From IMG/VR virus record IMGVR_UViG_3300020380_000001, positions 186,001 through 250,000 of that record: a stretch of 64,000 nt of DNA; one strand, written 5' to 3'. Every line of letters begins with the position of its first letter. The first letter of the stretch is position 1. The translations under genes and the position numbers were made by a program. Positions 1,266 through 11,012 of the stretch are shown piece after piece. The notes beneath the pieces were generated by a model, which was not told the DNA's origin, searched no databases, and worked only from the letters and a program-made list of their open reading frames with translations.

Positions 1266-1342
1266 TGGCAGGTGCGGCAGGATTCGAACCTGCGACCCTT
1301 GGCTTAGAAGGCCAATGCTCTATCCAGCTGCGCTACGCACCC
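1266..1342 (-). tRNA. trnR: tRNA-Arg(TCT)
   Basis: Cloverleaf; TTGGC-CTTCTAA-GCCAA anticodon arm; TTCGAAT T-loop; encoded CCA. Confidence 0.95.
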
Positions 1343-1354
1343 ATTAAAGATGGT

Positions 1355-1648
1355 TTAATCAAACGGCCAGTTCGGGTCTCGTTCTGAGAATTCCATCATA
1401 GAGCCATGGAATTCAAGGTTAATTGAACCTACCTTAGCTTCATGGTAAAATATCCCTATCACCGAGTCGTCTTGGTTGTATATCACCTCAACACGGTGCC
1501 CGTCAATTTCTGACTGTTCGATGTCGTCGCTACTAACCTCCATAGTGAGGTCTTCCCAACGACTGTAATTAACTTTTTTGAAGTTTCCGGATTCAGTAAG
1601 TGGCTTACCTTCCATCACGTTCATAAATCCACGCATTGTATCTGACAT
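1355..1648 (-). CDS. protein with shared N-terminal peptide (putative internal head protein)
   Basis: Starts MSDTMRGFMNVMEG; CTAAATAC upstream at about 1674-1681. Confidence 0.8.
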   Translation of the reverse strand: MSDTMRGFMNVMEGKPLTESGNFKKVNYSRWEDLTMEVSSDDIEQSEIDGHRVEVIYNQDDSVIGIFYHEAKVGSINLEFHGSMMEFSERDPNWPFD

Positions 1649-1706
1649 ATTGAGTTATCCTATATAATGTACGTATTTAGTGACAGAGGCTTCTTCACTG
1701 TATAAT

Positions 1707-1868
1707 TCAAAGATTAAAGTAGCGGTTTCTATCTTCAATACTAGGGGTCAGTTTACGCGTGGTTTCGCGAAACTTTTCTTCTTGTTCACGCACACTGCGC
1801 CAAAACTCTAGACCCTCTTCTTTAGTGGGTTCATGTTCAGAAAGTGCTTTCAGTAACTCGTCATCCAT
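1707..1868 (-). CDS. small hypothetical protein (53 aa)
   Basis: Read by hand: MDDELLKALSEHEPTKEEG...; TAATG overlap with the upstream ORF. Confidence 0.55.
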   Translation of the reverse strand: MDDELLKALSEHEPTKEEGLEFWRSVREQEEKFRETTRKLTPSIEDRNRYFNL

Positions 1869-2041
1869 TATTTCGACTCACTCTCGTGTATCTTCTTCCA
1901 CTGTTCAACAGCATCAAAAAACAAGTCACTCACGGCATCAGCGCCGGCATCAGCAATAGATATCATTGTTTCCGAGTCGTTCCACTGCGAAAGCCACTTC
2001 ATGGTTTCATCAAACCATTTAATTTTATCTTCGTCTGTCAT
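1868..2041 (-). CDS. small hypothetical protein
   Basis: Track ORF 1868..2092; the longer start overlaps tRNA-Leu, so MTDEDKIKW at 2041 is preferred. Confidence 0.6.
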   Translation of the reverse strand: MTDEDKIKWFDETMKWLSQWNDSETMISIADAGADAVSDLFFDAVEQWKKIHESESK

Positions 2042-2084
2042 TATGTATACGCCTTTAAAACAGTACACACTTGCAAATTTAATT

Positions 2085-2172
2085 TGGTGCACGGAGTGGG
2101 ACTCGAACCCACACGCCCATTACGGACAGGAGATTTTAAGTCTCCCACGACTACCAATTCCATCACCCGTGC
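2085..2172 (-). tRNA. trnL: tRNA-Leu(TAA)
   Basis: GGAGA-CTTAAAA-TCTCC arm, long variable arm, CCA. Confidence 0.93.
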
Positions 2173-2183
2173 ATGAAAGACAG

Positions 2184-2615
2184 TTAGATAACTGTCTTTG
2201 CGATTGTTGAAGCCGATCTACCGTCGTATAAACCTTCGTGATTAGCTTTAAGGTGCTTCATCACTTGGCCCATATTACAACCTGGGTTGGCTTCTACGAA
2301 TGAAACGATTGTGCCTCTCAGCTCATCTTCATTCATCTGTTTAGGAATGTACCCGTTTACCACATCAAGCTCAAGCTCATAAGCGGCAAGCTCGGATACC
2401 TGATTGCGCTCTTTCATGTTAGTGATAGTTTCATCAATTGACTTGACGAACTTTTTACACATCTGCACTACCTCTGCATCAGTCGATAGACGCTTACCAT
2501 CGTCTAAGCCGATGCGCGAAGCTTCAGAATACAACGTGGTTAAAATACTAACTCTGGCGCTGTCTCGTGCTTTCATAGCTGCCATACGGTCAGCCTTTAT
2601 CTTTTCTATCAACAT
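2184..2615 (-). CDS. GatB/YqeY domain protein
   Basis: MLIEKIKADRMAAMKARD...LLTTLYSE-like N-terminus and MGQVMKHLK...G.YDGRSAS C-terminus are typical of the YqeY family. Confidence 0.85.
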   Translation of the reverse strand: MLIEKIKADRMAAMKARDSARVSILTTLYSEASRIGLDDGKRLSTDAEVVQMCKKFVKSIDETITNMKERNQVSELAAYELELDVVNGYIPKQMNEDELRGTIVSFVEANPGCNMGQVMKHLKANHEGLYDGRSASTIAKTVI

Positions 2616-2632
2616 TTCTATGTTTCCTTCGG

Positions 2633-2863
2633 TTATGTGCCAGCCACCGTGTCGTGGTAAGCGGTGTCGAGTTTCCCGACAACTTTTACTTTCATAATAC
2701 GGTGCGGCGGATAGTGTTCAAAATAATCTTCGCCTTCGGGGTTTTCTGGATTGTGGCGATAGCCAGTTGCAACAATAGCGGAAGAGTGTTCGCGGGCTTT
2801 GCTTTCGTTCGACACGTTGTATTTGAATACTCGGCCGTCGTCGATGTAAACTTGGATTTCCAT
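2633..2863 (-). CDS. hypothetical protein
   Basis: Start at MEIQVYIDDGR, behind a GGAG RBS, within track ORF 2633..2911. Confidence 0.7.
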   Translation of the reverse strand: MEIQVYIDDGRVFKYNVSNESKAREHSSAIVATGYRHNPENPEGEDYFEHYPPHRIMKVKVVGKLDTAYHDTVAGT

Positions 2864-2935
2864 TAGTGTTACTCCGTGTATGTAGAAATGCAGGATCATG
2901 TCGCCAAACACTCACCTGCATTGAGGACAAACTAA

Positions 2936-3268
2936 TTAATAATCGTCGGTAGGATCAAACACAAGATAAGTATAACGGCCGCCATATGCATTCACTGTGT
3001 GAATACGAGCGTATACACCACCCTCGGTGTCTACTCCACGATTACTACCGTATGCTACTTGTACCCGGGATCCGTGCTTGGCTTTCACTTTTTGCAAGTC
3101 ACTGATCAACTCGTCGATGTCATGTGCGCCAGATATTCTGTCGCCTGCATCGTCGTGCGGCACATCTTCGTCGTCATCCGGCATGTCGTAATCTTCGTTT
3201 ACGGCTTTAACTGGCATGCCAGTGTCCGGATCTAGACCTTCTAATATTCTGCGTATGCGCTCTGACAT
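2936..3268 (-). CDS. protein with shared N-terminal peptide variant
   Basis: Starts MSERIRRILEG; acidic; TAAATA upstream at about 3303-3308. Confidence 0.75.
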   Translation of the reverse strand: MSERIRRILEGLDPDTGMPVKAVNEDYDMPDDDEDVPHDDAGDRISGAHDIDELISDLQKVKAKHGSRVQVAYGSNRGVDTEGGVYARIHTVNAYGGRYTYLVFDPTDDY

Positions 3269-3322
3269 ATAAATCTCCTAAATGCTAATCTCAGATATCT
3301 TTATTTAAGCAAGTAGAGAAAA

Positions 3323-3397
3323 TGGTAGAGACACCGTGGGTCGAACACGGAGCACCAGCCTTATGAGGGCCGGGCGAATACCAGCCATTCTGTCTCT
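3323..3397 (-). tRNA. atypical tRNA with CAT anticodon (Met or Ile2)
   Basis: AGAGACA/TGTCTCT acceptor, CTCATAA loop, canonical T arm, CCA; no connector before the D stem; 6-bp anticodon stem. Confidence 0.8.
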
Positions 3398-3403
3398 AGT
3401 ATT

Positions 3404-3493
3404 TGGCGGAGAGTACAGGATTCGAACCTGTGCGCCCCTTTCGGGACTCTCGATTAGCAGTCGAGCGCGATAGACCTACTCTGCCAACTCTCC
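3404..3493 (-). tRNA. trnS: tRNA-Ser(GCT)
   Basis: CTCGA-CTGCTAA-TCGAG arm, long V arm, G73-CCA. Confidence 0.95.
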
Positions 3494-3500
3494 TTTAAAC

Positions 3501-3597
3501 TGGTACCAGGTACGGGATTCGAACCCGCAGGGTCATTATTACAGACCGCGACAAACACTTTAATGATGCCGCGCCTTCCCATTCGGCGCAACCTAGT
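3501..3597 (-). ncRNA. tRNA-like RNA with degenerate anticodon arm (apparent TTA anticodon)
   Basis: 7-bp acceptor, CGCC/GGCG D stem, canonical T arm, A-CCA; weak GGCAT/GTGTT stem around CATTAAA; extra GGTC/GACC arm. Confidence 0.65.
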
Positions 3598-3598
3598 A

Positions 3599-3692
3599 TG
3601 GCGGTGAGGGTGGGATTCGAACCCACGGCCGATGTTGCCACCGACGTTTGATTTCAAGTCAAGTGCAATAAACCAGACTCTGCCACCTCACC
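3599..3692 (-). tRNA. trnS: tRNA-Ser(TGA)
   Basis: TTGA-CTTGAAA-TCAA arm, long V arm, G73-CCA. Confidence 0.95.
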
Positions 3693-3700
3693 ATAAACCT

Positions 3701-3829
3701 TTACAAGCTGTTTATATCAGCTATTGCTTCTTTAAGAGATTCACGCGCACGCTTTTCGCGCTCGAGTTCTTCAACTCTTTTTTCTAGCTTTTTTACAAGC
3801 TTAACAAGATCACCGTGTGTCATTGTCAT
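3701..3829 (-). CDS. small coiled-coil protein (42 aa)
   Basis: Read by hand: MTMTHGDLVKLVKKLEKRVEELERE...; GAGGT RBS. Confidence 0.55.
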   Translation of the reverse strand: MTMTHGDLVKLVKKLEKRVEELEREKRARESLKEAIADINSL

Positions 3830-3848
3830 TGTGAACCTCTATTTAATA

Positions 3849-3886
3849 TGGAGCCGGCCCTGCGATACAACAGGGGATCACCCGGC
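3849..3886 (-). ncRNA. CCA-terminated minihelix (tRNA acceptor mimic or remnant)
   Basis: GCCGG/CCGGC plus CCCTG/CAGGG stems ending T-CCA, spaced like the neighbouring tRNA genes. Confidence 0.45.
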
Positions 3887-3895
3887 ATTGTAAAC

Positions 3896-3970
3896 TGGTA
3901 GGTTAGGTGAGTATCGAACTCACTACAACTGATTTGTAAGAACAGCGCCTCACCTGTCGGCCTCTAACCT
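3896..3970 (-). tRNA. trnV: tRNA-Val(TAC)
   Basis: AGGTTAG/CTAACCT acceptor, CTTACAA loop with one stem mismatch, CCA. Confidence 0.8.
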
Positions 3971-4392
3971 GATGATTTATATTCTCGTAAATACTTGTTT
4001 CTTTTCGAGATCTTTTTATACCTACTACCGGCACCTTTGGCACCCCATGTGTCGGTTTGCGTATGACAATTAGGGCAAAGTAATCTACAATTACTTGGTA
4101 AATTATTGTCACTATCGCCGTCTATGTGATCTAGCTGCAAAGTCAACGGCTTATTGTTCCACATAGTACCGAGGCCGCACTCACTGCATACCGAACCGTA
4201 TTTCTCGACCAAGTATCGTTTAATATTGCCGCCAAGGCCTGCTTCTATTTTGGGAACCTCTTTATTTTCCCAGTCCCATGACAACTTACACTCCAAATCA
4301 CAATACGTGTTGCCTTTTTTATGGGATATATCAGATCCGCAATACCTACAGTGCACTTCTTTCTTTTTTCTGGCACCGGGCCTGTACCTCAC
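3964..4392 (-). CDS. HNH (homing) endonuclease
   Basis: LQLDHIDGDSDNN...CRLLCPNCH motif plus CxxC Zn fingers. Confidence 0.9.
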   Translation of the reverse strand: MRYRPGARKKKEVHCRYCGSDISHKKGNTYCDLECKLSWDWENKEVPKIEAGLGGNIKRYLVEKYGSVCSECGLGTMWNNKPLTLQLDHIDGDSDNNLPSNCRLLCPNCHTQTDTWGAKGAGSRYKKISKRNKYLREYKSSG

Positions 4393-4517
4393 AGATTTGC
4401 CGCACGAGCTTTTATGCCCGATATACTTGTGCCTATTCGTGTAAAACTTCGCCGCAATCGCAAATATATTTTTTCATAAAAATATTTAGCAACTGCCTGA
4501 ATAATCACGTCAAATAA

Positions 4518-4543
4518 GCACTCTGCCTCTGAGCTACGGATCT
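4518..4543 (-). pseudogene. 5' fragment of a tRNA gene (acceptor 5' strand plus D arm)
   Basis: AGATCCG-TA-GCTC-AGAGGCA-GAGT with no anticodon arm, T arm or matching 3' strand nearby. Confidence 0.45.
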
Positions 4544-4550
4544 ATAATTC

Positions 4551-4847
4551 TTAAACTGCTTCGTGTGTAAACTTACACATAACTCGGTAGAATACCTGCG
4601 TTGCAGCATACTTGTCGATATTGTCAAGAAACATTTGGAAGAACTTCTTCTCTGTGTCACTATTGTCCATAGCAACTGCTCTATTCAAAGTAGCTACGTA
4701 TGTTTCCCTAGGAATCAACATAAAGTTTGCGTATTCTACACGACCCCATTCAATTAACTGCTTAAATGTTTCGGGGTCTAACTCTGCTTTAAGCTCGTTG
4801 ACGCGCTCTGTAAGCTCGTCTATGAAGTTATTCTTGTAATCTTCCAT
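4551..4847 (-). CDS. hypothetical protein
   Basis: 98-aa ORF; promoter-like TATAGA/TTGTAA upstream. Confidence 0.65.
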   Translation of the reverse strand: MEDYKNNFIDELTERVNELKAELDPETFKQLIEWGRVEYANFMLIPRETYVATLNRAVAMDNSDTEKKFFQMFLDNIDKYAATQVFYRVMCKFTHEAV

Positions 4848-4966
4848 AATGTTACTCGTTAAGTTTTAATCTATAATAGCACGTCTGTAGAAGCTTACAA
4901 GAATAATTTCTAATTTATTTAAAAATAAAAAAGTGCCAAAGTAATTACTACAATGACACCTTAAAA

Positions 4967-5039
4967 TGGTTGCGGGTACAGGTAACGATCCTGCCGGTCC
5001 TGGGTTATGAGCCCTGGCTGAACACCGTGTTCACCCGCG
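4967..5039 (-). tRNA. atypical initiator-like tRNA-Met(CAT)
   Basis: C1:A72 mismatch and three consecutive G-C pairs closing CTCATAA (fMet hallmarks); ATCGTTA T-loop; no connector. Confidence 0.8.
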
Positions 5040-5053
5040 ATAGATTTAAAAAT

Positions 5054-5132
5054 TGGTTGCAAGGGCGGGATTTGAACCCGCGTCCGCTAGGGTTATGAGC
5101 CCTGCCATCTGCCAGACTGATTGTACCTTACT
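5054..5132 (-). tRNA. initiator-like tRNA-Met(CAT)
   Basis: 1:72 mismatch, GGG-CTCATAA-CCC, canonical T arm, CCA. Confidence 0.85.
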
Positions 5133-5138
5133 ATTGTT

Positions 5139-5216
5139 TGGCACACCCTCCAGGATTCGAACCTGGGACCTTCGCGTTCGTAGCACGACATTCTAATCCA
5201 ACTGAACTAAGGGTGC
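5139..5216 (-). tRNA. trnR: tRNA-Arg(ACG)
   Basis: CGTG-CTACGAA-CGCG arm; CCA. Confidence 0.95.
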
Positions 5217-5225
5217 AATAAACTT

Positions 5226-5720
5226 TTAATCATTTTCGTCAAGAAGGATATCTGTTATAATCTCTTCAAATGCGTGGTAGTCTTCCATACCATCCCAATT
5301 GCCTTCGTTATAAAAAATATCCGTTGTTAGTGATACTATCTCGCGGCGACGGTTACGCGGTAATGCCTTCCATTCATCTATCGAAGTAACGCCTTCTCTG
5401 CGCAAGGTTGACAAAATAGCAACAGAAAAACTGTCGTCATTGTTGCCTGCCTTATTAGTATCACTTAGCACCGAATCTATCATATCAGCAAACATTGCTG
5501 AATCCGGCATCGCTTCATCGTCAATCCAACCATGATTGTAAAACAAGTCACTAGCTAGATCACCGTAGCGATATTTTTCGCGTCTTGATAACGCGTTCCA
5601 GTCAGCTAGCGTGTTGATATTATCACGAGCTAACATTTGTAACACACCCGACTTAACAGCGGCATCGCTGCCGCTAGTGTCTTCCATCAAGTTCATAAAT
5701 TTGCGCATCTGATCTGACAT
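5226..5720 (-). CDS. acidic protein with shared N-terminal peptide; internal duplication
   Basis: Starts MSDQMRKFMNLMED; two copies of an L.R..I.T...W.AL.R..R....L..D.FY..G.W unit. Confidence 0.8.
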   Translation of the reverse strand: MSDQMRKFMNLMEDTSGSDAAVKSGVLQMLARDNINTLADWNALSRREKYRYGDLASDLFYNHGWIDDEAMPDSAMFADMIDSVLSDTNKAGNNDDSFSVAILSTLRREGVTSIDEWKALPRNRRREIVSLTTDIFYNEGNWDGMEDYHAFEEIITDILLDEND

Positions 5721-5729
5721 AAATGTTCC

Positions 5730-6209
5730 TTATTTGATCTGCAATATGCTTGCCGCCTGTCGTAGCGCGACTTCGCGCATCGCTTGCGACTTGTATCTTT
5801 CTTGCATAAAACTCAAAAGTTGATTTATGCCATCTTCAAAATCATCATACGCAGAGTCAGGGTCACCAACACCATAAGCACCGATGATAACACCGTTAGC
5901 AAAGTATTCACCGTCTTCTGCTATTTCAAGAACCTCGGCTTCTTCTTTAGCTTGAGCAGCGTTAATAACCTTAGTAGCAAACTCGTACGGAGCCATAGCG
6001 CCATATGATAAGAGTTGCTTGCCTACTTTTTGCGTATAAGACTCTACTGAACCTTGTTCTATACCGTATATTAACGCTGACGCTTTATCGTAAAACTGAT
6101 CAACTGATATAGCATCAGAGTTTTCCGTAATAGCTGTGTCAATATTTTGATTCAATGGCCCGGACTGACCTTCCATTAAATTCATTATTTTGCGCATCTG
6201 ATCTGACAC
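5730..6209 (-). CDS. protein with shared N-terminal peptide
   Basis: Starts MSDQMRKIMNLMEG; GGAG RBS; GTAAATAAG upstream. Confidence 0.8.
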   Translation of the reverse strand: MSDQMRKIMNLMEGQSGPLNQNIDTAITENSDAISVDQFYDKASALIYGIEQGSVESYTQKVGKQLLSYGAMAPYEFATKVINAAQAKEEAEVLEIAEDGEYFANGVIIGAYGVGDPDSAYDDFEDGINQLLSFMQERYKSQAMREVALRQAASILQIK

Positions 6210-6256
6210 TTAATATCTCCCATAAACTATTGTATAGCTTATTTACGCATTTAAGT

Positions 6257-6333
6257 TGGAAGGGGTGGCAGGATTCGAACCTGCGAGTACCGGGATCAAA
6301 GCCCGGGGCCTTAGACCGCTTGGCGACACCCCT
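6257..6333 (-). tRNA. trnQ: tRNA-Gln(TTG)
   Basis: CCGGG-CTTTGAT-CCCGG arm; CCA. Confidence 0.93.
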
Positions 6334-6339
6334 ACAAAC

Positions 6340-6415
6340 TGGTCTCTCGAGCAGGATTTGAACCTGCGACACGTAGTCCCAAACCACGCATGTTACCAGA
6401 CTACACTATCGAGAG
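6340..6415 (-). tRNA. trnP: tRNA-Pro(TGG)
   Basis: CGTGG-TTTGGGA-CTACG arm; CCA. Confidence 0.93.
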
Positions 6416-6424
6416 AATCAAAAC

Positions 6425-6502
6425 TGGTTGTCCCTGCTGGATTTGAACCAGCGATCAGCGATTATCAGTCGCACGCTTTAGGCCAGGCTAAGCTAAGGGA
6501 CA
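6425..6502 (-). tRNA. trnI: tRNA-Ile(GAT)
   Basis: GCGA-CTGATAA-TCGC arm; CCA. Confidence 0.93.
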
Positions 6503-6510
6503 ATAAACTT

Positions 6511-7353
6511 TTATCGTTTACGTAGAGTAATCTCAACACCTTTAATTGCATTGAGTTCATCTACGATTTGCTGAGGATCTACCTCTATGTCAGTACGACG
6601 TCTAGGCACATACTCGATGTCTCTACCTATTAATTGAATACGTTTAGGCAAAACACGCAATATAAACGGACCACCAACCTGTAGATTTCTATTAGTTAGG
6701 TCATAGTAATAACCGAGCATTTTGAGCGCTTTCGCTACTTCGTCCGATACTACCTGTTTTTTCACCTGTTTTGATGGTTTGTCCGAAACAATATACTCTT
6801 CTGCGGGTGTTTCGTCGTCGTACTCAAGTGCTAGCTCAACCACATTTTTTACGTGTTTCTTTGCAATAAACAAAACACCGTCGTCCATGTCATGCTCTAC
6901 GTCATCTAATTCAAGATCCGAAACAAGCCCAGCGATTTCACTTGCTGTCCATCCAGGCATAGTCAGTTGTACCATTTTACGCTTGGACTCTCTGACTGTC
7001 TTTTTCGGTCCGTTGCCTTGACTAGCATAATACTTGCTGAACTCTTCGTCAGCATATTCGGCCATTTGCTCAATGAAATCCCAGCGAGGGCCATCTTCAG
7101 CATATGCCAAATCCGGAACTATTTTTGTCAGCACTTCGTTTTCAACTGCTGACTCATCATCATCTAGAATTGCACGGGTCAAGTCATGTAAGCGATCTCT
7201 GTCGTCACCAAACAACTCGTTACCAGCGTCATGTGCCATACCATCCAATTTAGACATCAAGCGGCCGAAAACATGTCTTTTTGCTTTCTTGTGTCGCTCG
7301 TCACCAGTTGGTGACTCCATCAAATTCATTAATTCGCGCATTTTTTCTGACAT
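6511..7353 (-). CDS. acidic protein with shared N-terminal peptide
   Basis: Starts MSEKMRELMNLMES; GTAAATAAG upstream; upstream 30 bp resembles that of 5730..6209. Confidence 0.8.
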   Translation of the reverse strand: MSEKMRELMNLMESPTGDERHKKAKRHVFGRLMSKLDGMAHDAGNELFGDDRDRLHDLTRAILDDDESAVENEVLTKIVPDLAYAEDGPRWDFIEQMAEYADEEFSKYYASQGNGPKKTVRESKRKMVQLTMPGWTASEIAGLVSDLELDDVEHDMDDGVLFIAKKHVKNVVELALEYDDETPAEEYIVSDKPSKQVKKQVVSDEVAKALKMLGYYYDLTNRNLQVGGPFILRVLPKRIQLIGRDIEYVPRRRTDIEVDPQQIVDELNAIKGVEITLRKR

Positions 7354-7400
7354 TACTGTCTCCTATAAACTATGTCATATAGCTTATTTACGCAGGTAAT

Positions 7401-7500
7401 TGGTGGACCCCCGCGGACTTGCACCACACGCCTCAATACTACCCTCACTTTATTTCTTTTAAGACACCGGATTTACAGTCCGGGGTGAGGAAAGGGATCC
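7401..7500 (-). ncRNA. rearranged tRNA-Tyr(GTA)-like RNA lacking a D arm
   Basis: GGATCCC/GGGGTCC acceptor plus A-CCA; perfect CCGGA-CTGTAAA-TCCGG arm; CCTCAC/GTGAGG helix replaces the D arm. Confidence 0.7.
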
Positions 7501-7523
7501 TTAATCTGTTACAAAAACTGTTT

Positions 7524-7547
7524 TGGAAGGGGTCGTTACCAACCCCT
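7524..7547 (-). ncRNA. CCA-terminated microhelix
   Basis: AGGGGTT-GGTAAC-GACCCCT-T-CCA; no U-tract on either strand. Confidence 0.35.
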
Positions 7548-7561
7548 CAATAAAACAATTC

Positions 7562-8053
7562 TTAAAAGTGCGGGTTTTTGTCATTGTGAACACCGCGTGC
7601 AAGCGTCCAAATGCCTGCTCGTTTATATGTAGCAGTGTTGCCTTTACGCCAAAATACTGTACCGTCGCTTGTTGTAACTTTCTTCATAGTTTTAGAAATC
7701 TTGACAATTGTACCGCACGGATACCAGTCACCGTTAAAACCGTAACTTACTACGTCACCAATCTTTGGCATGCGCTCTACTGCATGATCATCGTGACGCT
7801 CTACAGCAATATAAGTATCACCGGTTTCTTCACTCAACTGCTCAGCGATTCGTTGCGCAATAAAGCTAGAGCCACAATAATTAAGGGTAACAAACTGGGC
7901 CATTATTTCTTTGTAGAAGTTCGGCGCTTTTTCTTCATCGCCACCTGCCATCTTTAGCGCAGTTTCACGGACTTCTTCAGCCCATGCTTCAGTGTAGTCT
8001 TCGTTACGATCAATAATGTTACCAGTTTTTAAATCTACTCTATAATGTATCAT
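7562..8053 (-). CDS. hypothetical early protein
   Basis: 163-aa ORF behind a repeated promoter cassette. Confidence 0.75.
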   Translation of the reverse strand: MIHYRVDLKTGNIIDRNEDYTEAWAEEVRETALKMAGGDEEKAPNFYKEIMAQFVTLNYCGSSFIAQRIAEQLSEETGDTYIAVERHDDHAVERMPKIGDVVSYGFNGDWYPCGTIVKISKTMKKVTTSDGTVFWRKGNTATYKRAGIWTLARGVHNDKNPHF

Positions 8054-8141
8054 AATTTGCTACCTTGTGTTTGTTTAATCAACCTACACAGACATAATAG
8101 CAGAATGACATTCAAGTACAAGACTTGTTTGAAAATAATTT
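8051..8141 (-). repeat. promoter-leader cassette, copy 1
   Basis: About 90 bp, near-identical to 9506..9600 and similar to 24741..24843 (+). Confidence 0.85.
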
Positions 8142-8153
8142 AAAATATATTTT

Positions 8154-8239
8154 GCACAGCGGACGGGTTTCGAACCCGCAATGCGATATTCGCGCTGCCT
8201 TGAAAGGGCAGTGACTTTACCAGTTTGTCCACCGCTGTG
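8154..8239 (-). tRNA. trnE: tRNA-Glu(TTC) with long variable arm, no encoded CCA
   Basis: CTGCC-CTTTCAA-GGCAG arm; 15-nt V region CGCGAATATCGCATT. Confidence 0.85.
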
Positions 8240-8310
8240 GAAAATATACTTATTCTGGGCAAAAATAAAGCGACTTAATAGCCGCTTTATCATGGCATTA
8301 AGGTTTGTTA

Positions 8311-9021
8311 CTATGCGCGTCTACGAACAGCGATTCCTAGTACTGCTAAAAGCGCAAGTGCTAATGAACCTGGCTCCGGTACCGCTGTTACACCACCTAA
8401 CTGTAAATCATATGAACGCTGCATTAGCCCAGTATCAGGCGATGCAATATTACCGCGCACTTGGATGGCTCCGATGTTTGTGAAGTCAGTGTTACTAAAT
8501 TCACGCGAAAGGAAAAACGCATCACGTCCTGGGCGATTAACACCGGGTATCGGTAACTCAACAGTTTCAGCAGTTCCGTTAGGACCTGACCAAAACGTTA
8601 CGTCAAACCAAGCATTCAAATCTGATTCAATAATCGTTGTAATAAATTTTATCGGGTTGCCAATTGCAGTTAAGTCAAGTCCGCCTAAGCCGAATGGATT
8701 AATTGCATTTGATCCGTCAACGCCGTCCCATTGAATGGTAAACATTGATTCGTTACCTGCGCCTGAACTAAAGAAAAAGTTATCAGCCGCTACGTTTACA
8801 GAGGCGCCTTGGTTGAACTCGTCAACAACGCTTGTTATTTCTAAATCTCGTTCTCCGCCGATCATAGAACCCAATACAGAGCTAAACAAAGTTTGGCCTT
8901 GCATTACTACCATTGGTCCTTGGTCATCAGAAAAGTCATCAATCGTTATCATACCTGCGTTGGCTGAGGTAGTAATACCCATGGCCAATACAGCGCCTAA
9001 CAATAGAGATTTCATTTTCAT
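8311..9021 (-). CDS. PEP-CTERM sorting-domain surface protein
   Basis: Sec signal peptide ending SANA; C-terminal VPEPGS + hydrophobic TM + RRRA. Confidence 0.93.
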   Translation of the reverse strand: MKMKSLLLGAVLAMGITTSANAGMITIDDFSDDQGPMVVMQGQTLFSSVLGSMIGGERDLEITSVVDEFNQGASVNVAADNFFFSSGAGNESMFTIQWDGVDGSNAINPFGLGGLDLTAIGNPIKFITTIIESDLNAWFDVTFWSGPNGTAETVELPIPGVNRPGRDAFFLSREFSNTDFTNIGAIQVRGNIASPDTGLMQRSYDLQLGGVTAVPEPGSLALALLAVLGIAVRRRA

Positions 9022-9068
9022 ATAAATGATCCTTTTAAAGTTATCCAGTTGCTTTTAGCAACACATAC

Positions 9069-9096
9069 ACTATACATTACTTTTTTACAAGGTCAA
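9069..9096 (-). promoter_or_regulatory. sigma70-like promoter for the PEP-CTERM gene
   Basis: TTGACC-16-TATAGT. Confidence 0.65.
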
Positions 9097-9229
9097 GAAG
9101 TTTCTTTAATTCGTAAAACAGTATTTAATAGGCATGTATGAATAACACACGATTTTGACCTCTTATTCACAAAAAGCCAAAATCGTGTGTTATGCGATGA
9201 CCATAATGATCACCGCGCTACACTACTAA

Positions 9230-9508
9230 TTATTTTTGCAAATCGTAATATTCGTACTCATAACGACCACCTTCGATCTCGCCCCACTGCTCCCAGCCGT
9301 TCTTTGAAACATGCATTGTGTTCGCGGCGTGCTCAGGAGTAATGATAAAACGTACATCAAAACCAGCAGCGTGTGCCTCAGCTTTTACACTTTCAAAGTC
9401 TTCAGCGCTGTGTGCAGCACCGTGCCATACGTTTTCAGTTGCGCCTACCATTTCTTCAGCGCTGTTCCAGTTCGCTACTACAAAACTTGTTGCTTTACGA
9501 TTGTTCAT
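9230..9508 (-). CDS. hypothetical early protein
   Basis: 92-aa ORF behind the repeated cassette. Confidence 0.7.
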   Translation of the reverse strand: MNNRKATSFVVANWNSAEEMVGATENVWHGAAHSAEDFESVKAEAHAAGFDVRFIITPEHAANTMHVSKNGWEQWGEIEGGRYEYEYYDLQK

Positions 9509-9600
9509 AATTTGCTACCTTGTGTTTGTTTAATCAACCTACACAGATATAATAGCAAAATGACATCCAAACACAAGGCCTTTTTGAAAATAATTTCAAA
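9506..9600 (-). repeat. promoter-leader cassette, copy 2
   Basis: See 8051..8141. Confidence 0.85.
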
Positions 9601-9685
9601 AATATTTCGTTGCTCTGGGTACTTATATTAGTCGCTTTTAAACTCATGTGTTTATCATCTCGCAAAATGGCAAACATATAAGTTT

Positions 9686-9770
9686 TGGTGGGTTGGGTGG
9701 GATTCGAACCCACGAAGCATTACGCGCTAGATTAAAAGTCTAGTATCTTTAACCACTCGATCACCAACCC
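9686..9770 (-). tRNA. trnK: tRNA-Lys(TTT) on a class II (Tyr-like) body
   Basis: CTAGA-CTTTTAA-TCTAG arm; 13-nt V region CGCGTAATGCTTC; A73-CCA. Confidence 0.88.
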
Positions 9771-9803
9771 ATATCGTTTTCGTACTTTCGTCTTTCGTTT
9801 CAT
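9732..9803 (-). CDS. Lys/Arg-rich 23-aa leader ORF running into tRNA-Lys
   Basis: AGGAGA RBS + MKRKTKVRKRYGLVIEWLKILDF; the stop is the TAA in the anticodon loop. Confidence 0.4.
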   Translation of the reverse strand: MKRKTKVRKRYGLVIEWLKILDF

Positions 9804-9838
9804 TTTCTTTCTCCTGTTAATTATACGAGTGTAGTATG

Positions 9839-9912
9839 CAGGGACGACGGGACTTGAACCCGCGCTCTCCGCAGTGACAGTGCGATATTTTAACCAACTA
9901 AACTACGCCCCT
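9839..9912 (-). tRNA. trnD: tRNA-Asp(GTC), no encoded CCA, flanked by a 13-bp inverted repeat
   Basis: CGCA-CTGTCAC-TGCG arm; flanks 9827..9839 and 9913..9925 are perfectly complementary. Confidence 0.88.
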
Positions 9913-9936
9913 GCATACTACACTCATATCTTTATT

Positions 9937-10488
9937 TTAATATAACGAGTCTTCTACGATTTCAAACAAGTCATTATACATAGCTGAAGCCATTGCATTA
10001 AACTCGTCGTAAGCGCCATCAGCAAAAAAATCACTATACAACATATGTGCATCGCCTTTATTGTCACGTACTGACTTTGACACGTACTGTAACGAGCGAG
10101 GCTTAAAGTGCGACATCTTTTGCAATCTAGGTTCCGGCGGGAAAGCACGCATTTCAATATCAATTGAGTCATCGCCTTCCTGATAAAACACTAACATTTT
10201 AAGAACTGTATTCGCGTTCCAGTTAGTTTTTATCGGCTTAAACTTGATAGTGAAGCCTTCTTTACCAGCTTGAGGAACATCGTCGCCTTGTAGTACGTCG
10301 ACACCCATATCAGCAATCTCATCTAACCAAGTGTTCATACCACTAACGATTTGTTCACGGAACTTGCTGTATTGTTCTCTGAATCCGGCAGCGTCGCTTT
10401 CCATTAATCTGAAAACCTTTTCCATACCGGAATTTTGTCCTGTTTTTTTCCCTTCAAGGATTTTGTTAACTCGATTTCGGTCAGCCAT
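9937..10488 (-). CDS. protein with variant shared N-terminal peptide
   Basis: MADRNRVNKILEG...MEKVFRLMES; ATAAATAG upstream. Confidence 0.75.
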   Translation of the reverse strand: MADRNRVNKILEGKKTGQNSGMEKVFRLMESDAAGFREQYSKFREQIVSGMNTWLDEIADMGVDVLQGDDVPQAGKEGFTIKFKPIKTNWNANTVLKMLVFYQEGDDSIDIEMRAFPPEPRLQKMSHFKPRSLQYVSKSVRDNKGDAHMLYSDFFADGAYDEFNAMASAMYNDLFEIVEDSLY

Positions 10489-10566
10489 GTTTAGTATTCT
10501 CCTGTTATCCGTTATCGTTACTATTTATCCAATAACTTAAGAGCGTACAAAACCAATAACCAAAAT

Positions 10567-10658
10567 TGGCGGACGGTGCTGGATTTGAACCAGCGCGGGG
10601 GATATTCTCCACCTCCGGGTTAACAGCCCGGCGCAATCGGCCACTATGCGAACCGCCC
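10567..10658 (-). tRNA. trnN: tRNA-Asn(GTT) on a class II (Ser-like) body
   Basis: CCGGG-CTGTTAA-CCCGG arm; 20-nt V region; G73-CCA; G3:U70 pair. Confidence 0.88.
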
Positions 10659-10674
10659 ATAAACTTTTAAAGTT

Positions 10675-10750
10675 TGGTGGAGTATACCAGACTCGAACTG
10701 GTCAGGCTATCATCTTGCAAGGATGATCCGGGTGCCCATGCCCATACCCC
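10675..10750 (-). tRNA. trnA: tRNA-Ala(TGC), atypical D region
   Basis: G3:U70; ATCATC-CTTGCAA-GATGAT 6-bp arm; CCA. Confidence 0.88.
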
Positions 10751-10758
10751 ATTAAACT

Positions 10759-10833
10759 TGGTGCCGAGTGGTGGTACCGCCCCACCCTCTAAGGATTTTC
10801 AATCCATCGCTAATCTGTCTCAGCTAACTCGGC
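10759..10833 (-). tRNA. trnF: tRNA-Phe(GAA), non-canonical T and D loops
   Basis: GCCGAGT/ACTCGGC acceptor; TTGAAAA loop; T-loop GGCGGTA. Confidence 0.85.
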
Positions 10834-10838
10834 TAAAT

Positions 10839-10912
10839 TGGTGCCGGCGGAGAGAATCGAACTCCCGTAGACGCATTACAAGTGCGCTGCATGGCCACTG
10901 TGCTACGCCGGC
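10839..10912 (-). tRNA. trnT: tRNA-Thr(TGT)
   Basis: CGCA-CTTGTAA-TGCG arm; CCA. Confidence 0.93.
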
Positions 10913-10935
10913 TGAATATCTGTCTAAATACATTC

Positions 10936-11012
10936 TGGGGTAATAGACGGGCAACGATCCCGCATCTTCCAGGGTCACATCCTGGGGCTCTGCCATTTGA
11001 GCTACTATCACC
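10936..11012 (-). tRNA. trnH: tRNA-His(GTG)
   Basis: G-1:C73; CCAGG-ATGTGAC-CCTGG arm; T-loop ATCGTTG; CCA paired with the leader (CATTCTGG/CCAGAATG). Confidence 0.9.

What the first reader, a model, noticed from the sequence alone, without database searches (positions are those of the whole stretch)
8154..10658. Class I anticodons (Glu, Lys, Asn) on class II long-variable-arm tRNA bodies
Seen: tRNA-Glu(TTC) has a 15-nt V arm. tRNA-Lys(TTT) has a 13-nt V arm ending CTTC, as in tRNA-Tyr. tRNA-Asn(GTT) has a 20-nt V arm, G73, a Ser-like D loop and G3:U70. Established: in bacteria long V arms are normally confined to Ser, Leu, Tyr and Sec, and they are identity elements for SerRS and TyrRS. Nematode nev-tRNAs and bacterial allo-tRNAs with V arms are charged with an amino acid other than the one their anticodon specifies. 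tRNA-Lys(UUU) and tRNA-Glu(UUC) are targets of the defence nucleases PrrC, PARIS/AriB and RloC. Inference: these are either nuclease-resistant replacements built on foreign scaffolds or deliberately mis-acylated tRNAs that cause mistranslation.
Basis: partly seen in the sequence, partly recalled or inferred. Interest (0 to 1): 0.72.

Follow-up and report, generated by a model that had tools for sequence, protein, structure and literature searches.

The report
Phage Lys, Asn, Glu tRNAs with extra arms
A marine jumbo phage carries lysine, asparagine and glutamate tRNAs with the extra hairpin arm normally found only on Ser/Leu/Tyr tRNAs, and such tRNAs turn out to be conserved and widespread in phages, apparently undescribed, and probably still charged with the normal amino acid.

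Summary
Three tRNA genes on the minus strand, Glu(UUC), Lys(UUU) and Asn(GUU), fold into 7/5 cloverleaves with variable arms of 15, 13 and 20 nt. The Asn tRNA has G73 and G3:U70.

They are not unique. Pattern scans of IMG/VR found at least 118 loci with long-arm Lys(UUU) (101 distinct sequences), 53 loci with long-arm Asn(GUU) (35 distinct) and 5 more with long-arm Glu. Cultured phages carry them too: phiCbK, CcrBL9, XacN1, Xanthomonas phage X1 and Ruegeria V10.

The arm stem is kept by compensatory changes. Its geometry is mostly Tyr-type. The three tRNAs are about 99% identical in a relative whose flanks are only 86-94% identical.

Discriminators follow the anticodon (Lys A73, Asn G73, often U1:A72). 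An anticodon-blind classifier calls the Glu body Glu. The Lys and Asn bodies score ambiguously.

The phage has no aaRS, uses the standard code, and these codons make up 17.6% of its coding sequence.

My best reading is that these are working, cognately charged phage tRNAs whose arm is under selection. Evasion of tRNA-cutting defence nucleases is the likeliest benefit, but that is inferred, not shown.

Deliberate mistranslation is unlikely. It is not excluded for the Asn tRNA, which also carries SerRS and AlaRS elements.

The parts
8154..8238 (-). tRNA-Glu(UUC). Anticodon at 8202-8204, discriminator G73 at 8155, no encoded CCA. The body is Glu-type with a hairpin added in the variable region.
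   Evidence: (53.2 bits). Classifier result is Glu by 8.9 nats. The D and anticodon arms match T5-like and crAss001 tRNA-Glu. There is one difference, in the T loop, from relative L001.
8180..8194 (-). Variable arm of tRNA-Glu, 15 nt: 1 unpaired nt, 4-bp stem CGCG/CGC(G), 3-nt loop, then 3 unpaired nt (AUU).
   Evidence: It is identical in L001.
9686..9770 (-). tRNA-Lys(UUU). Anticodon at 9734-9736, A73, encoded CCA. D arm NNNG-AGYGGYYAAA-NNN of the bacterial tRNA-Tyr type.
   Evidence: (63.9 bits). Nearest database tRNAs are tRNA-Tyr of Xanthomonas phage X1 and tRNA-Ser(UGA) of cyanophages and PA5oct, at 76-80%. Classifier result is Tyr/Leu/Lys within 2.3 nats.
9714..9726 (-). Variable arm of tRNA-Lys, 13 nt, CGCGUAAUGCUUC: a short 2-3 bp stem followed by 3 unpaired nt (UUC). 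This is Tyr-type geometry.
   Evidence: The single difference from L001 lies in the arm's loop/stem edge. Near-identical arms occur in other phage long-arm Lys tRNAs, for example CGCGAAAUGCUUC in L103.
10567..10658 (-). tRNA-Asn(GUU). Anticodon at 10622-10624, G73 at 10570, G3 (10656):U70 (10573), G1:C72, G2:C71, C11:G24, encoded CCA.
   Evidence: (54.8 bits). It is 100% identical in L001. The closest known homologue is the 89-nt tRNA-Asn of Xanthomonas phage XacN1, at 80.5% and also with G3:U70.
10595..10614 (-). Variable arm of tRNA-Asn, 20 nt: 1 unpaired nt, a 5-bp stem with one internal mismatch, a 5-nt loop, then 2 unpaired nt.
   Evidence: The geometry falls within the range of the phage's own tRNA-Ser(GCU).
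1266..11011 (-). Window part of the phage's tRNA array: 20 of about 26 tRNA genes, all on the minus strand and interspersed with small ORFs. It extends upstream to genome position 172956.

Best explanation
The three genes are working elongator tRNAs of a marine jumbo phage. They belong to widespread phage-borne lineages in which a tRNA with a class I anticodon (above all Lys UUU/CUU and Asn GUU, more rarely Glu UUC) carries a class II-style core: a 3-bp D stem, a long D loop and a hairpin variable arm. The arm is mostly of tRNA-Tyr-type geometry, with 1 unpaired nt, a 3-4 bp stem, a GNRA tetraloop and 3-4 unpaired nt.

They are most likely charged by the host's LysRS, AsnRS and GluRS, because these enzymes read mainly the anticodon and the discriminator. 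They would then serve the phage's abundant AAA/AAG, AAU/AAC and GAA/GAG codons.

What is shown: the structure exists, it is conserved under purifying selection, the arm stem covaries, the trait is common in phages and rare in bacterial chromosomes, and identity elements track the anticodon.

What is inferred: (a) cognate charging, and (b) the benefit of the arm. My best guess for (b) is that the arm changes the shape of the anticodon-stem/D-arm/elbow region, so that tRNA-targeting nucleases fitted to the host's class I tRNA fail to cut the phage copy. These could be host defences such as PARIS AriB, PrrC or Schlafen-type enzymes, or a phage's own host shut-off activity.
For: Structure.

Selection: there are 2 differences in 262 nt of the three tRNAs against 6-14% divergence in the flanks of the relative L001.

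Covariation: with one fixed structure imposed on all 15-nt arms of long-arm Lys (n=32), the three stem pairs are paired in 32, 28 and 24 of 32 sequences, using 4-5 pair types each. All three exceed every one of 500 column shuffles. A hairpin of at least 3 bp forms in 81-88% of arms against 32-41% of shuffled arms.

Cultured phages phiCbK, CcrBL9, XacN1, X1 and Ruegeria V10 have them. In 185,579 bacterial and archaeal species genomes a strict pattern gave 29 hits, of which ARAGORN called 23 as long-arm Lys(UUU) tRNAs; more than half of these lie within multi-tRNA clusters. Only 1 of 201 genomes of one Actinomycetota class had it.

Family coherence: the nearest neighbour of a long-arm Lys in another locus is another long-arm Lys in 103 of 125 cases (mean identity 0.84). 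The best class II tRNA in the same locus averages 0.54.

Identity elements: Lys has A73 in 76 of 101 sequences. Asn has G73 in 33 of 35 and U1:A72 in 19 of 35. XacN1's long-arm Cys has U73. Published rules say Asn identity is the anticodon plus G73 and is transplantable, Lys identity is the anticodon plus A73, and U1:A72 is the GatCAB determinant (PMC9976931). Most other long-arm class I tRNAs classify as their own isotype: Cys 11/12, Glu 7/7, Met 9/11, Trp 7/10.

Genome context: no aaRS or CCA enzyme in the phage. Standard code, with K+E+N at 17.6% of codons.

Defence link: AriB cuts Lys(UUU), Thr(UGU) and Asn(GUU) and reads both the anticodon stem and D-loop U16-U17 (PMC12409363). RorSlfn5 fragments of Lys(UUU) are the most abundant (PMC13056530). 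Within Thr, Glu, Gln and Gly, long arms occur in 29 of 255 U34 isoacceptors against 1 of 139 others (Fisher p=3e-5). The Asn tRNA has C39 where U39 is needed for AriB cleavage of tRNA-Lys.

Expression: metatranscriptome contigs from two studies span 10571-10935, covering Asn-Ala-Phe-Thr. This is weak evidence.
Against: There is no charging, expression or cleavage experiment. The RNA-library contigs could derive from contaminating DNA.

Absence of nucleotide 47 is a major E. coli GluRS determinant (PMC9976931), so a 15-nt arm should hurt Glu charging in an E. coli-like host.

The Lys tRNA shares A73, U35 and a Tyr-type arm with tRNA-Tyr, it scores highest as Tyr, and the phage has no tRNA-Tyr.

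The Asn tRNA carries the E. coli SerRS elements and G3:U70.

Known nuclease evasion by phage tRNAs works through anticodon stem-loop and D-loop substitutions, not arms (PMC10264068, PMC12409363, PMC12445682). Some defences (Septu, Retron-Eco7 PtuAB) actually target the tRNA-Tyr variable loop.

The Lys anticodon arm still contains U36-A-A-U-C.

The U34 enrichment could simply reflect which tRNAs AT-rich phages need. The sample behind it was selected for phages that already had a long-arm Lys or Asn.
Confidence: 0.5

Rival explanations
1. Mis-acylation. Because of the class II arm and shared identity elements, one or more of these tRNAs is charged with the wrong amino acid. Candidates are Lys(UUU) by TyrRS, and Asn(GUU) by SerRS or, through G3:U70, by AlaRS. 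The result would be proteome-wide substitution at Lys or Asn codons during infection, as with nematode nev-tRNAs or tRNA-Ser anticodon variants.
For: The Lys tRNA has A73, U35 and a Tyr-type 13-nt arm ending CUUC. The classifier's top call is Tyr, and the genome has no tRNA-Tyr. A73 and U35 are the critical Tyr determinants (PMC9976931). The Asn tRNA has G1:C72, G2:C71, C11:G24, G73 and a 20-nt arm whose geometry matches the phage's own tRNA-Ser(GCU). G3:U70 is kept in both this phage and XacN1 even though 4:69 and 5:68 have changed. Serine identity does not depend on the anticodon.
Against: Across the families the discriminator and 1:72 pair follow the anticodon, not a class II donor. Asn has G73 in 33 of 35 and U1:A72 (never found in tRNA-Ser) in 19 of 35. 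G3:U70 occurs in only 2 of 35. Arm geometry in most members is 1 unpaired nt on the 5' side and 3-4 on the 3' side, unlike Ser at 1/1. LysRS and AsnRS identity is anticodon plus discriminator and is transplantable. The affected codons are 11% (K+N) of a standard-code proteome. In the sampled loci, 88 of 122 with long-arm Lys have no short-arm Lys(UUU) nearby. G73 is unfavourable for AlaRS, which prefers A73.
Confidence: 0.15
2. Folding or stability aid. The arm and class II core make A/U-rich, modification-dependent tRNAs (Lys UUU, Asn, Ile UAU, Thr UGU and others) fold and work when they are made quickly and under-modified late in infection. No nuclease is involved.
For: Long arms concentrate in tRNAs with U or A at position 36 and in U34 isoacceptors. 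Unmodified E. coli tRNA-Lys is charged 140-fold less well than the native tRNA (PMC9976931). The arms carry stable GNRA tetraloops. Selection on the stem is shown.
Against: There is no direct evidence. Many of the same loci also carry short-arm versions of the same tRNA (34 for Lys, 11 for Asn). Host bacteria manage without arms.
Confidence: 0.2
3. Tolerated drift or remoulding with no function. The arms are leftovers of descent from Tyr/Ser/Leu genes by anticodon change, or are inserted hairpins, and are tolerated because the cognate synthetases ignore the variable region.
For: Phage arrays blur tRNA classes in both directions: 58 short-arm Leu tRNAs turned up in the same loci. Asn GUU is one mutation from Tyr GUA or Ser GCU. 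The Glu arm looks like a simple hairpin insertion into a normal Glu tRNA.
Against: The arm stems covary and far exceed shuffled controls. The arms are conserved between G000 and L001 while the flanks diverge. The families are old, coherent and spread across many unrelated phages. Lys UUU, the commonest case, is two mutations from any class II anticodon. No recent donor exists in this genome.
Confidence: 0.1
4. Not translation adaptors. The RNAs act as decoys, primers, regulatory RNAs or pseudogenes.
For: The neighbouring 97-nt tRNA-like element (3501-3597) is clearly aberrant. The Glu gene lacks an encoded CCA and the phage has no CCA-adding enzyme.
Against: All three score 53-64 bits on the tRNA model, with intact 7/5 stems, U33, purine 37, a canonical T loop and GG in the D loop. 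Two of them encode CCA. The host CCA enzyme can complete the Glu tRNA.
Confidence: 0.05

Closest known systems
Bacterial class II tRNAs, especially tRNA-Tyr
   Same: A 7/5 acceptor/T architecture, a 3-bp D stem with an 11-nt D loop, and a hairpin variable arm. The Lys tRNA reproduces the tRNA-Tyr layout: D arm NNNG-AGYGGYYAAA-NNN, a 13-nt arm ending CUUC, and A73. Family arms show the Tyr-type pattern of 1 unpaired nt 5' and 3-4 unpaired nt 3'.
   Different: The anticodons are UUU, GUU and UUC. The discriminator follows the anticodon (G73 for Asn and Glu). The Glu body is a genuine Glu body.
Nematode nev-tRNAs (Hamashima et al. 2012, PMC3333845)
   Same: Both are class II-shaped tRNAs carrying class I anticodons.
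   Different: nev-tRNAs keep Leu/Ser identity elements, are charged with Leu, are weakly expressed and read rare codons (PMC4033280). Here the identity elements match the anticodon, and the codons are among the phage's commonest.
Bacterial allo-tRNAs and selC*-type tRNAs (Mukai et al. 2017, PMC5389517)
   Same: Both have a long variable arm with non-Ser/Leu anticodons, and some occur in phage tRNA clusters.
   Different: allo-tRNAs are defined by 8/4 or 9/3 acceptor/T stems, a Sec-like D stem with a tetraloop, and mostly G73/U73 Ser identity. The window's tRNAs are 7/5 with ordinary D loops.
Nuclease-resistant phage tRNAs: T5 tRNA-Lys/Thr/Asn against PARIS AriB, phage tRNA-Thr against P2 OLD, phage tRNA-Tyr against Retron-Eco7
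   Same: The same isotypes (Lys UUU, Asn GUU) are encoded by a virulent phage as extra copies that differ structurally from the host tRNA. AriB also reads the D loop.
   Different: Documented resistance comes from point changes in the anticodon stem-loop or D loop, or from a shortened anticodon stem. No arm-based resistance has been reported, and none was tested here.
Alloacceptor tRNA remoulding (anticodon change after gene duplication, known from mitochondria)
   Same: It could explain the Tyr/Ser-like features of the Lys and Asn bodies. Asn GUU is one step from Tyr GUA or Ser GCU.
   Different: There is no recent donor in this genome (at most 70% identity). The families are old and coherent across phages. 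The discriminators have already adapted.

Membership tests
tRNA (Rfam RF00005), functional elongator type | Cloverleaf scoring above the gathering threshold, with a 7-bp acceptor stem, 5-bp T stem, 7-nt anticodon loop with U33 and purine 37, a T-loop UUCRAnY and GG in the D loop | tested here: met
   53.2, 63.9 and 54.8 bits against 29. Folds and parse.
Class II (long-arm) tRNA architecture | Variable region of at least 10 nt forming a hairpin, with a 3-bp D stem and an enlarged D loop | tested here: met
   Variable regions of 15, 13 and 20 nt with stems. D region is 3 bp plus an 11-nt loop in all three. The Lys arm stem is weak (2-3 bp, -0.6 kcal/mol).
tRNA-Lys isoacceptor (bacterial LysRS identity) | Anticodon U34 U35 U36 and discriminator A73 | tested here: met
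   UUU and A73. Rule from PMC9976931. Actual charging is not testable with these tools.
tRNA-Asn isoacceptor (bacterial AsnRS identity) | Anticodon GUU and discriminator G73; U1:A72 if the host uses the GatCAB route | tested here: inconclusive
   GUU and G73 are present. The 1:72 pair is G:C, not U:A, so the tRNA fits a host with AsnRS but not a transamidation host. The host is unknown.
tRNA-Glu isoacceptor (E. coli GluRS identity) | U34 U35 C36 A37, plus the augmented D helix (U11:A24, U13:G22..A46) and absence of nucleotide 47 | tested here: not met
   The anticodon loop CUUUCAA fits. However 11:24 is A:U, 13/22 is A/A, and the variable region is 15 nt. T5-like phage tRNA-Glu has the same D arm, so the E. 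coli rule may not transfer. The classifier still calls the body Glu.
tRNA-Ser identity (bacterial SerRS) | Long arm in Ser orientation (about 1 unpaired nt on each side, stem of at least 5 bp), G73, G1:C72, G2:C71, C11:G24 | tested here: inconclusive
   The Asn tRNA has all the sequence elements and a 1/2-geometry arm like the phage's own Ser(GCU). The classifier does not rank Ser near the top, and the wider family lacks G1/G2. Lys (A73) and Glu (A1:U72, C2:G71) do not fit.
tRNA-Ala identity (AlaRS) | G3:U70 in the acceptor stem, helped by A73 and G2:C71 | tested here: inconclusive
   The Asn tRNA has G3:U70 and G2:C71 but G73. G3:U70 is shared with XacN1 but occurs in only 2 of 35 family members.
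allo-tRNA | 8/4 or 9/3 acceptor/T-stem composition with a Sec-like long D stem and tetraloop | tested here: not met
   All three are 7/5 with a 3-bp D stem and 11-nt loop. Definition from PMC5389517.
nev-tRNA-like mistranslating tRNA | Charged according to the class II body rather than the anticodon | not testable with these tools
   Only indirect evidence is available: identity elements follow the anticodon and the codons concerned are abundant.
Defence-nuclease-resistant phage tRNA | Resists cleavage by a tRNA-targeting defence nuclease that cuts the host counterpart, and rescues infection | not testable with these tools
   Circumstantial only. The isotypes overlap AriB, PrrC and Slfn targets. 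There is U34 enrichment. The Asn tRNA has C39 instead of U39. The Lys tRNA keeps UAAUC.

The most novel reading that the evidence does not exclude
Adding a class II-type variable arm to class I tRNAs may be a general, previously unrecognised phage counter-defence. The arm would sterically mask the anticodon-stem/D-arm face from tRNA-cutting immune nucleases (PARIS, PrrC/RloC, Schlafen, OLD-type) while leaving anticodon-reading synthetases unaffected. That would explain why hundreds of large phages carry long-arm Lys(UUU), Asn(GUU), Thr(UGU) and other U34 tRNAs.
Probability: 0.3. Interest if true: 0.85.

Novelty: new variant of a known kind. Interest (0 to 1): 0.62.

Why it matters
The textbook rule says that in bacteria only Ser, Leu, Tyr and Sec tRNAs have a long variable arm. 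That rule underlies tRNA identity models, isotype prediction and the design of orthogonal tRNAs. Here it is broken systematically in phages, by coherent and selected tRNA families that include the sole Lys, Asn and Glu tRNAs of a 306-kb marine phage. The same kind of tRNA sits unremarked in the annotations of model phages such as phiCbK and XacN1.

If these tRNAs are cognately charged, LysRS, AsnRS and GluRS must tolerate a class II core, which is useful for tRNA engineering. If the arm blocks defence nucleases, it is a new counter-defence principle. If some are mis-charged, and the Asn tRNA with G3:U70 is the best candidate, phages would be reshaping the host's decoding.

Cultured systems make all of this directly testable: XacN1 on Xanthomonas, phiCbK or CcrBL9 on Caulobacter, and Ruegeria phage V10.

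Tried and rejected
1. Near and protein BLAST of the region and of the 2136-aa ORF against cultured phages gave no match. The phage has no close cultured relative.

2. Neighbour-protein searches in IMG/VR found only one close relative, L001. It is too similar for covariation analysis, and the second search found nothing.

3. Recent remoulding from the phage's own Ser/Leu genes is rejected. Core identity is at most 70%.

4. A phage-encoded partner synthetase is rejected. The four families searched (class IIb tRNA-synt_2, Glu/Gln tRNA-synt_1c, class IIa core tRNA-synt_2b, Tyr/Trp tRNA-synt_1b) and the CCA-adding enzyme family gave no hit. AlaRS was not searched.

5. An alternative genetic code or ochre suppression is rejected. 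Coding density is 88% under table 11. TAA is the commonest stop (208 of 335). The 'tRNA-Stop(tta)' scores below the Rfam threshold (27.4 against 29 bits), and its putative anticodon differs in the relative.

6. Long-arm Lys as native bacterial tRNAs is rejected. It is sporadic in bacteria, found in 1 of 201 genomes of one class.

7. A literature search (7 queries, several papers read) found no description of phage long-arm Lys, Asn or Glu tRNAs. The XacN1 genome paper and the eLife paper on phage tRNAs do not mention variable arms. Subscription journals are not covered, so absence is not proven.

8. I did not run complex prediction on a synthetase-tRNA pair. The host is unknown and RNA jobs receive no verdict.

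9. Metatranscriptome contigs cover the Asn-Ala-Phe-Thr cluster, but the Lys and Glu genes are not clearly covered. DNA carry-over cannot be excluded.

Full report
**What is there.** The window is positions 186001-250000 of a 306.5-kb IMG/VR virus genome with direct terminal repeats. The genome carries about 26 tRNA genes, all on one strand. ARAGORN finds 23. Rfam adds Val(UAC) at 3899-3970, Phe(GAA) at 10762-10833 and a third CAU tRNA at 5057-5132. There is no tRNA-Tyr or tRNA-Trp.

The three genes in the finding are called by both programs: Glu(UUC) at 8154-8238, Lys(UUU) at 9686-9770 and Asn(GUU) at 10567-10658. Each folds into a 7/5 cloverleaf with an extra hairpin. Parsing the sequences gives variable regions of 15, 13 and 20 nt. 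It also confirms the CUUC end of the Lys arm, and G73 and G3:U70 in the Asn tRNA.

**What the bodies resemble.** BLAST against cultured phages and inspection of the hits gave different answers for the three tRNAs.

- Glu: the D arm and anticodon arm are those of ordinary phage tRNA-Glu. The D arm is identical to that of T5-like phage Sepoy, and positions 8-44 are 94% identical to crAss001. The 4-nt variable loop GAUU is replaced by a hairpin plus AUU.
- Lys: it looks most like tRNA-Tyr of Xanthomonas phage X1 and tRNA-Ser(UGA) of cyanophages and PA5oct. It reproduces the E. coli-type tRNA-Tyr D arm and arm layout.
- Asn: it has a clear homologue in Xanthomonas jumbo phage XacN1. That tRNA is 89 nt, 80.5% identical, and also has G3:U70. 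Phage X1 has another long-arm Asn.

I then built an anticodon-blind and arm-blind naive-Bayes isotype classifier. It was trained on 1585 canonical tRNAs from phage arrays and reached 76% cross-validated accuracy.

| tRNA | Classifier result (nats below the top score) |
|---|---|
| Glu | Glu, 8.9 nats ahead of the next isotype |
| Lys | Tyr 0 / Leu -0.8 / Lys -2.3 |
| Asn | Tyr 0 / Asn -0.3 / Gln -0.6 |

None of the three is a recent copy of the phage's own class II tRNAs; core identity is at most 70%.

**How common they are.** I scanned IMG/VR for each anticodon arm followed by a long spacer and a T loop.

- Asn(GUU): 53 loci, 35 distinct long-arm tRNAs.
- Glu(UUC): 5 further loci.

Many of these contigs are 100-600 kb. 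Cultured phages phiCbK, CcrBL9 (and other Bertelyvirus members), XacN1 and Ruegeria V10 carry 87-89-nt tRNA-Lys(CUU), annotated simply as tRNA-Lys.

A stricter Lys pattern over one genome for each of 185,579 prokaryote species gave 29 hits. ARAGORN called 23 of them as long-arm Lys(UUU) tRNAs. More than half of these lie within multi-tRNA clusters, mostly on MAG contigs. The rest include a conserved singleton in several Actinomycetota MAGs. In 200 other genomes of that class the pattern was not found.

Among 1950 distinct tRNAs in all fetched loci, long arms also occur in several other isotypes:

| Isotype | Long-arm / total |
|---|---|
| Ile(UAU) | 12/16 |
| Cys | 12/58 |
| Thr(UGU) | 13/61 |
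| Lys(CUU) | 12/90 |
| Trp | 10/65 |
| CAU tRNAs | 11/104 |
| Glu(UUC) | 8/80 |

They never occur in Ala(UGC), Gly(GCC) or Arg(UCU). Conversely, 58 Leu tRNAs have short arms.

**Evidence for selection.**
- In relative L001 the three tRNAs differ at 2 of 262 positions, while the flanks are 86-94% identical (p about 2e-5).
- Arm sequences form hairpins of at least 3 bp in 81-88% of cases, against 32-41% for shuffled arms.
- With one fixed structure imposed on all 15-nt Lys arms, the three stem pairs are paired in 32, 28 and 24 of 32 sequences, using 4-5 pair types each. All exceed every one of 500 column shuffles. The 17-nt arms behave the same way.
- Arm geometry is typically 1 unpaired nt, a 3-4 bp stem, a GNRA tetraloop and 3-4 unpaired nt. 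This is the tRNA-Tyr type, distinct from Ser (1/1, 5 bp) and Leu (1/2) in the same loci.
- Long-arm Lys tRNAs are each other's nearest neighbours across loci (103 of 125, identity 0.84). Their identity to the best class II tRNA in the same locus averages only 0.54. They are therefore an old, horizontally spread family, not the product of repeated local accidents.

**Which amino acid.** This cannot be computed, so it is inference.

The family data favour cognate charging.
- Lys has A73 in 76 of 101 sequences.
- Asn has G73 in 33 of 35 and U1:A72 in 19 of 35. U1:A72 is the determinant for GatCAB amidation and never occurs in tRNA-Ser.
- XacN1's long-arm Cys has U73.
- Most other long-arm class I tRNAs classify as their own isotype.
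- The tRNA identity review (PMC9976931) states that Asn identity is the anticodon plus G73 and can be transplanted into tRNA-Lys. Lys identity is the anticodon plus A73.
- The phage has no synthetase in the four families searched (class IIb, Glu/Gln, class IIa core, Tyr/Trp), so it depends on host enzymes.
- The genome uses the standard code, with 88% coding density and TAA as the main stop. Lys, Glu and Asn codons make up 17.6% of its codons, so systematic mis-charging would be costly.

There are three caveats.
- Absence of nucleotide 47 is a major E. coli GluRS determinant.
- The Lys tRNA shares A73, U35 and a Tyr-type arm with tRNA-Tyr.
- The window's Asn tRNA and its XacN1 homologue belong to a sub-lineage with G1:C72, G2:C71, G3:U70, C11:G24, G73 and an arm within the geometry range of the phage's own tRNA-Ser(GCU). 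SerRS or AlaRS charging of that one tRNA cannot be dismissed.

**Why an arm.** This too is inference. Several defence nucleases cut exactly these tRNAs.
- PARIS AriB cuts Lys(UUU), Thr(UGU) and Asn(GUU). It reads both the anticodon stem (UAAUC|A) and D-loop U16-U17, and phage T5 escapes it with variant Lys, Thr and Asn tRNAs (PMC12409363).
- PrrC cuts Lys(UUU) (PMC10264068).
- RorSlfn5 yields mostly Lys(UUU) fragments (PMC13056530).
- P2 OLD prefers Thr(UGU) (PMC12445682).

In my sample, long arms are enriched in U34 isoacceptors within Thr, Glu, Gln and Gly: 29 of 255 against 1 of 139, p=3e-5. The Asn tRNA has C39 at the position where U39 is essential for AriB cleavage of tRNA-Lys.

This fits a structural-disguise role, but no published case of arm-based resistance was found. 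Some defences even target the tRNA-Tyr arm. The Lys anticodon arm keeps UAAUC. The enrichment has other possible causes. A folding or stability role and neutral tolerance remain rivals, although the covariation argues against neutrality.

**Expression.** The phage occurs in marine metagenomes from many studies. Contigs from two metatranscriptome studies span 10571-10935 (Asn-Ala-Phe-Thr) with 1-2 differences. DNA carry-over cannot be excluded, and Lys and Glu are not clearly covered.

**Comparison with known systems.** These tRNAs are not allo-tRNAs, because they are 7/5 rather than 8/4 or 9/3. They differ from nev-tRNAs in having anticodon-matched identity elements and in reading abundant codons. 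They work like ordinary phage supplementary tRNAs, possibly of the nuclease-resistant kind, but with a structural change not described in the papers I could search.

**Verdict.** I rate this a new variant of a known kind. Interest is moderate to high: the rule-breaking is systematic and experimentally tractable, not unique to this window.

Noticed in passing
window 3501-3597 (-), and L001 15107-15201: A 97-nt tRNA-like element lies between tRNA-Ser(GCU) and tRNA-Ser(UGA). ARAGORN calls it tRNA-Stop(tta), but Rfam gives only 27.4 bits, below threshold. It has A33, a wobble-rich anticodon stem and a 25-nt arm. In the 97%-identical relative, all three 'anticodon' bases differ (UUA against CGG), with a further change that turns G28.U42 into G:C and one change in the arm loop. 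The genome uses TAA as its main stop, so this is not a working suppressor. An exact-pattern scan found it only in these two phages.
   Followed up: partly
window 9937-10488 (-): A 183-aa ORF with no Pfam hit lies between tRNA-Asp and tRNA-Asn. It is absent from relative L001, where Asn and Asp are 23 nt apart. It also has no coverage in the metatranscriptome contigs. This is an indel of a small gene inside the tRNA array, possibly a mobile ORF.
   Followed up: partly
window 8311-9021 (-): A 236-aa ORF between tRNA-Glu and tRNA-Lys ends in a PEP-CTERM sorting motif (Pfam PF07589, E=1.8e-5). This hints at a Gram-negative host with an exosortase. The ORF is 94% identical in L001.
   Followed up: no
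loci L184, L191, L201, L202 and others: Phage-type tRNA arrays contain 58 tRNAs with Leu anticodons (CAA, UAA, UAG, CAG, AAG) but short, class I-size variable loops (about 77 nt in total). This is the reverse of the finding. The classifier often does not call them Leu.
   Followed up: no
loci L195, L201, L202 and others: tRNA-Ile(UAU), itself a rare anticodon in bacteria, carries a very long arm (median 23 nt) in 12 of 16 cases in these arrays.
   Followed up: no
L188, L189, L190, L192, L194, L203 (Actinomycetota MAG contigs): A conserved 85-87-nt long-arm tRNA-Lys(UUU) with an actinobacterial-type acceptor stem (GCCCCUG...) occurs in several Actinomycetota MAGs. In five it stands alone in the fetched stretch and in one it sits beside a tRNA-Glu. 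One of the contigs is 359 kb. The pattern was not found in 200 other genomes of that class. It may sit on a mobile element.
   Followed up: partly
L002 2217-2305 (Xanthomonas phage XacN1): XacN1 also has an 89-nt tRNA-Cys(GCA) with a 15-nt arm and the Cys-specific U73. It also has a long-arm tRNA-Lys(CUU) next to a normal-length tRNA-Lys.
   Followed up: partly
window 5057-5132 (-): A third CAU-anticodon tRNA, found by Rfam only at 36.5 bits, has an apparent A1:A72 mismatch at the top of the acceptor stem. That is reminiscent of initiator tRNAs. ATA makes up 33% of Ile codons, so one of the three CAU tRNAs is probably tRNA-Ile2.
   Followed up: no
window 10762-10833 (-): tRNA-Phe(GAA) has an unusual T loop, GGCGGUA, in place of UUCRAnY. 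ARAGORN misses it.
   Followed up: no
window 14713-21123 (-), 22708-23988 (-), 58326-60581 (-): A 2136-aa ORF has no tblastn match in cultured phages. There is also an RCC1-repeat-like protein (PHROG 4219) and a Lon-type ATP-dependent protease (PHROG 4871, E=2e-203), next to tail genes.
   Followed up: no
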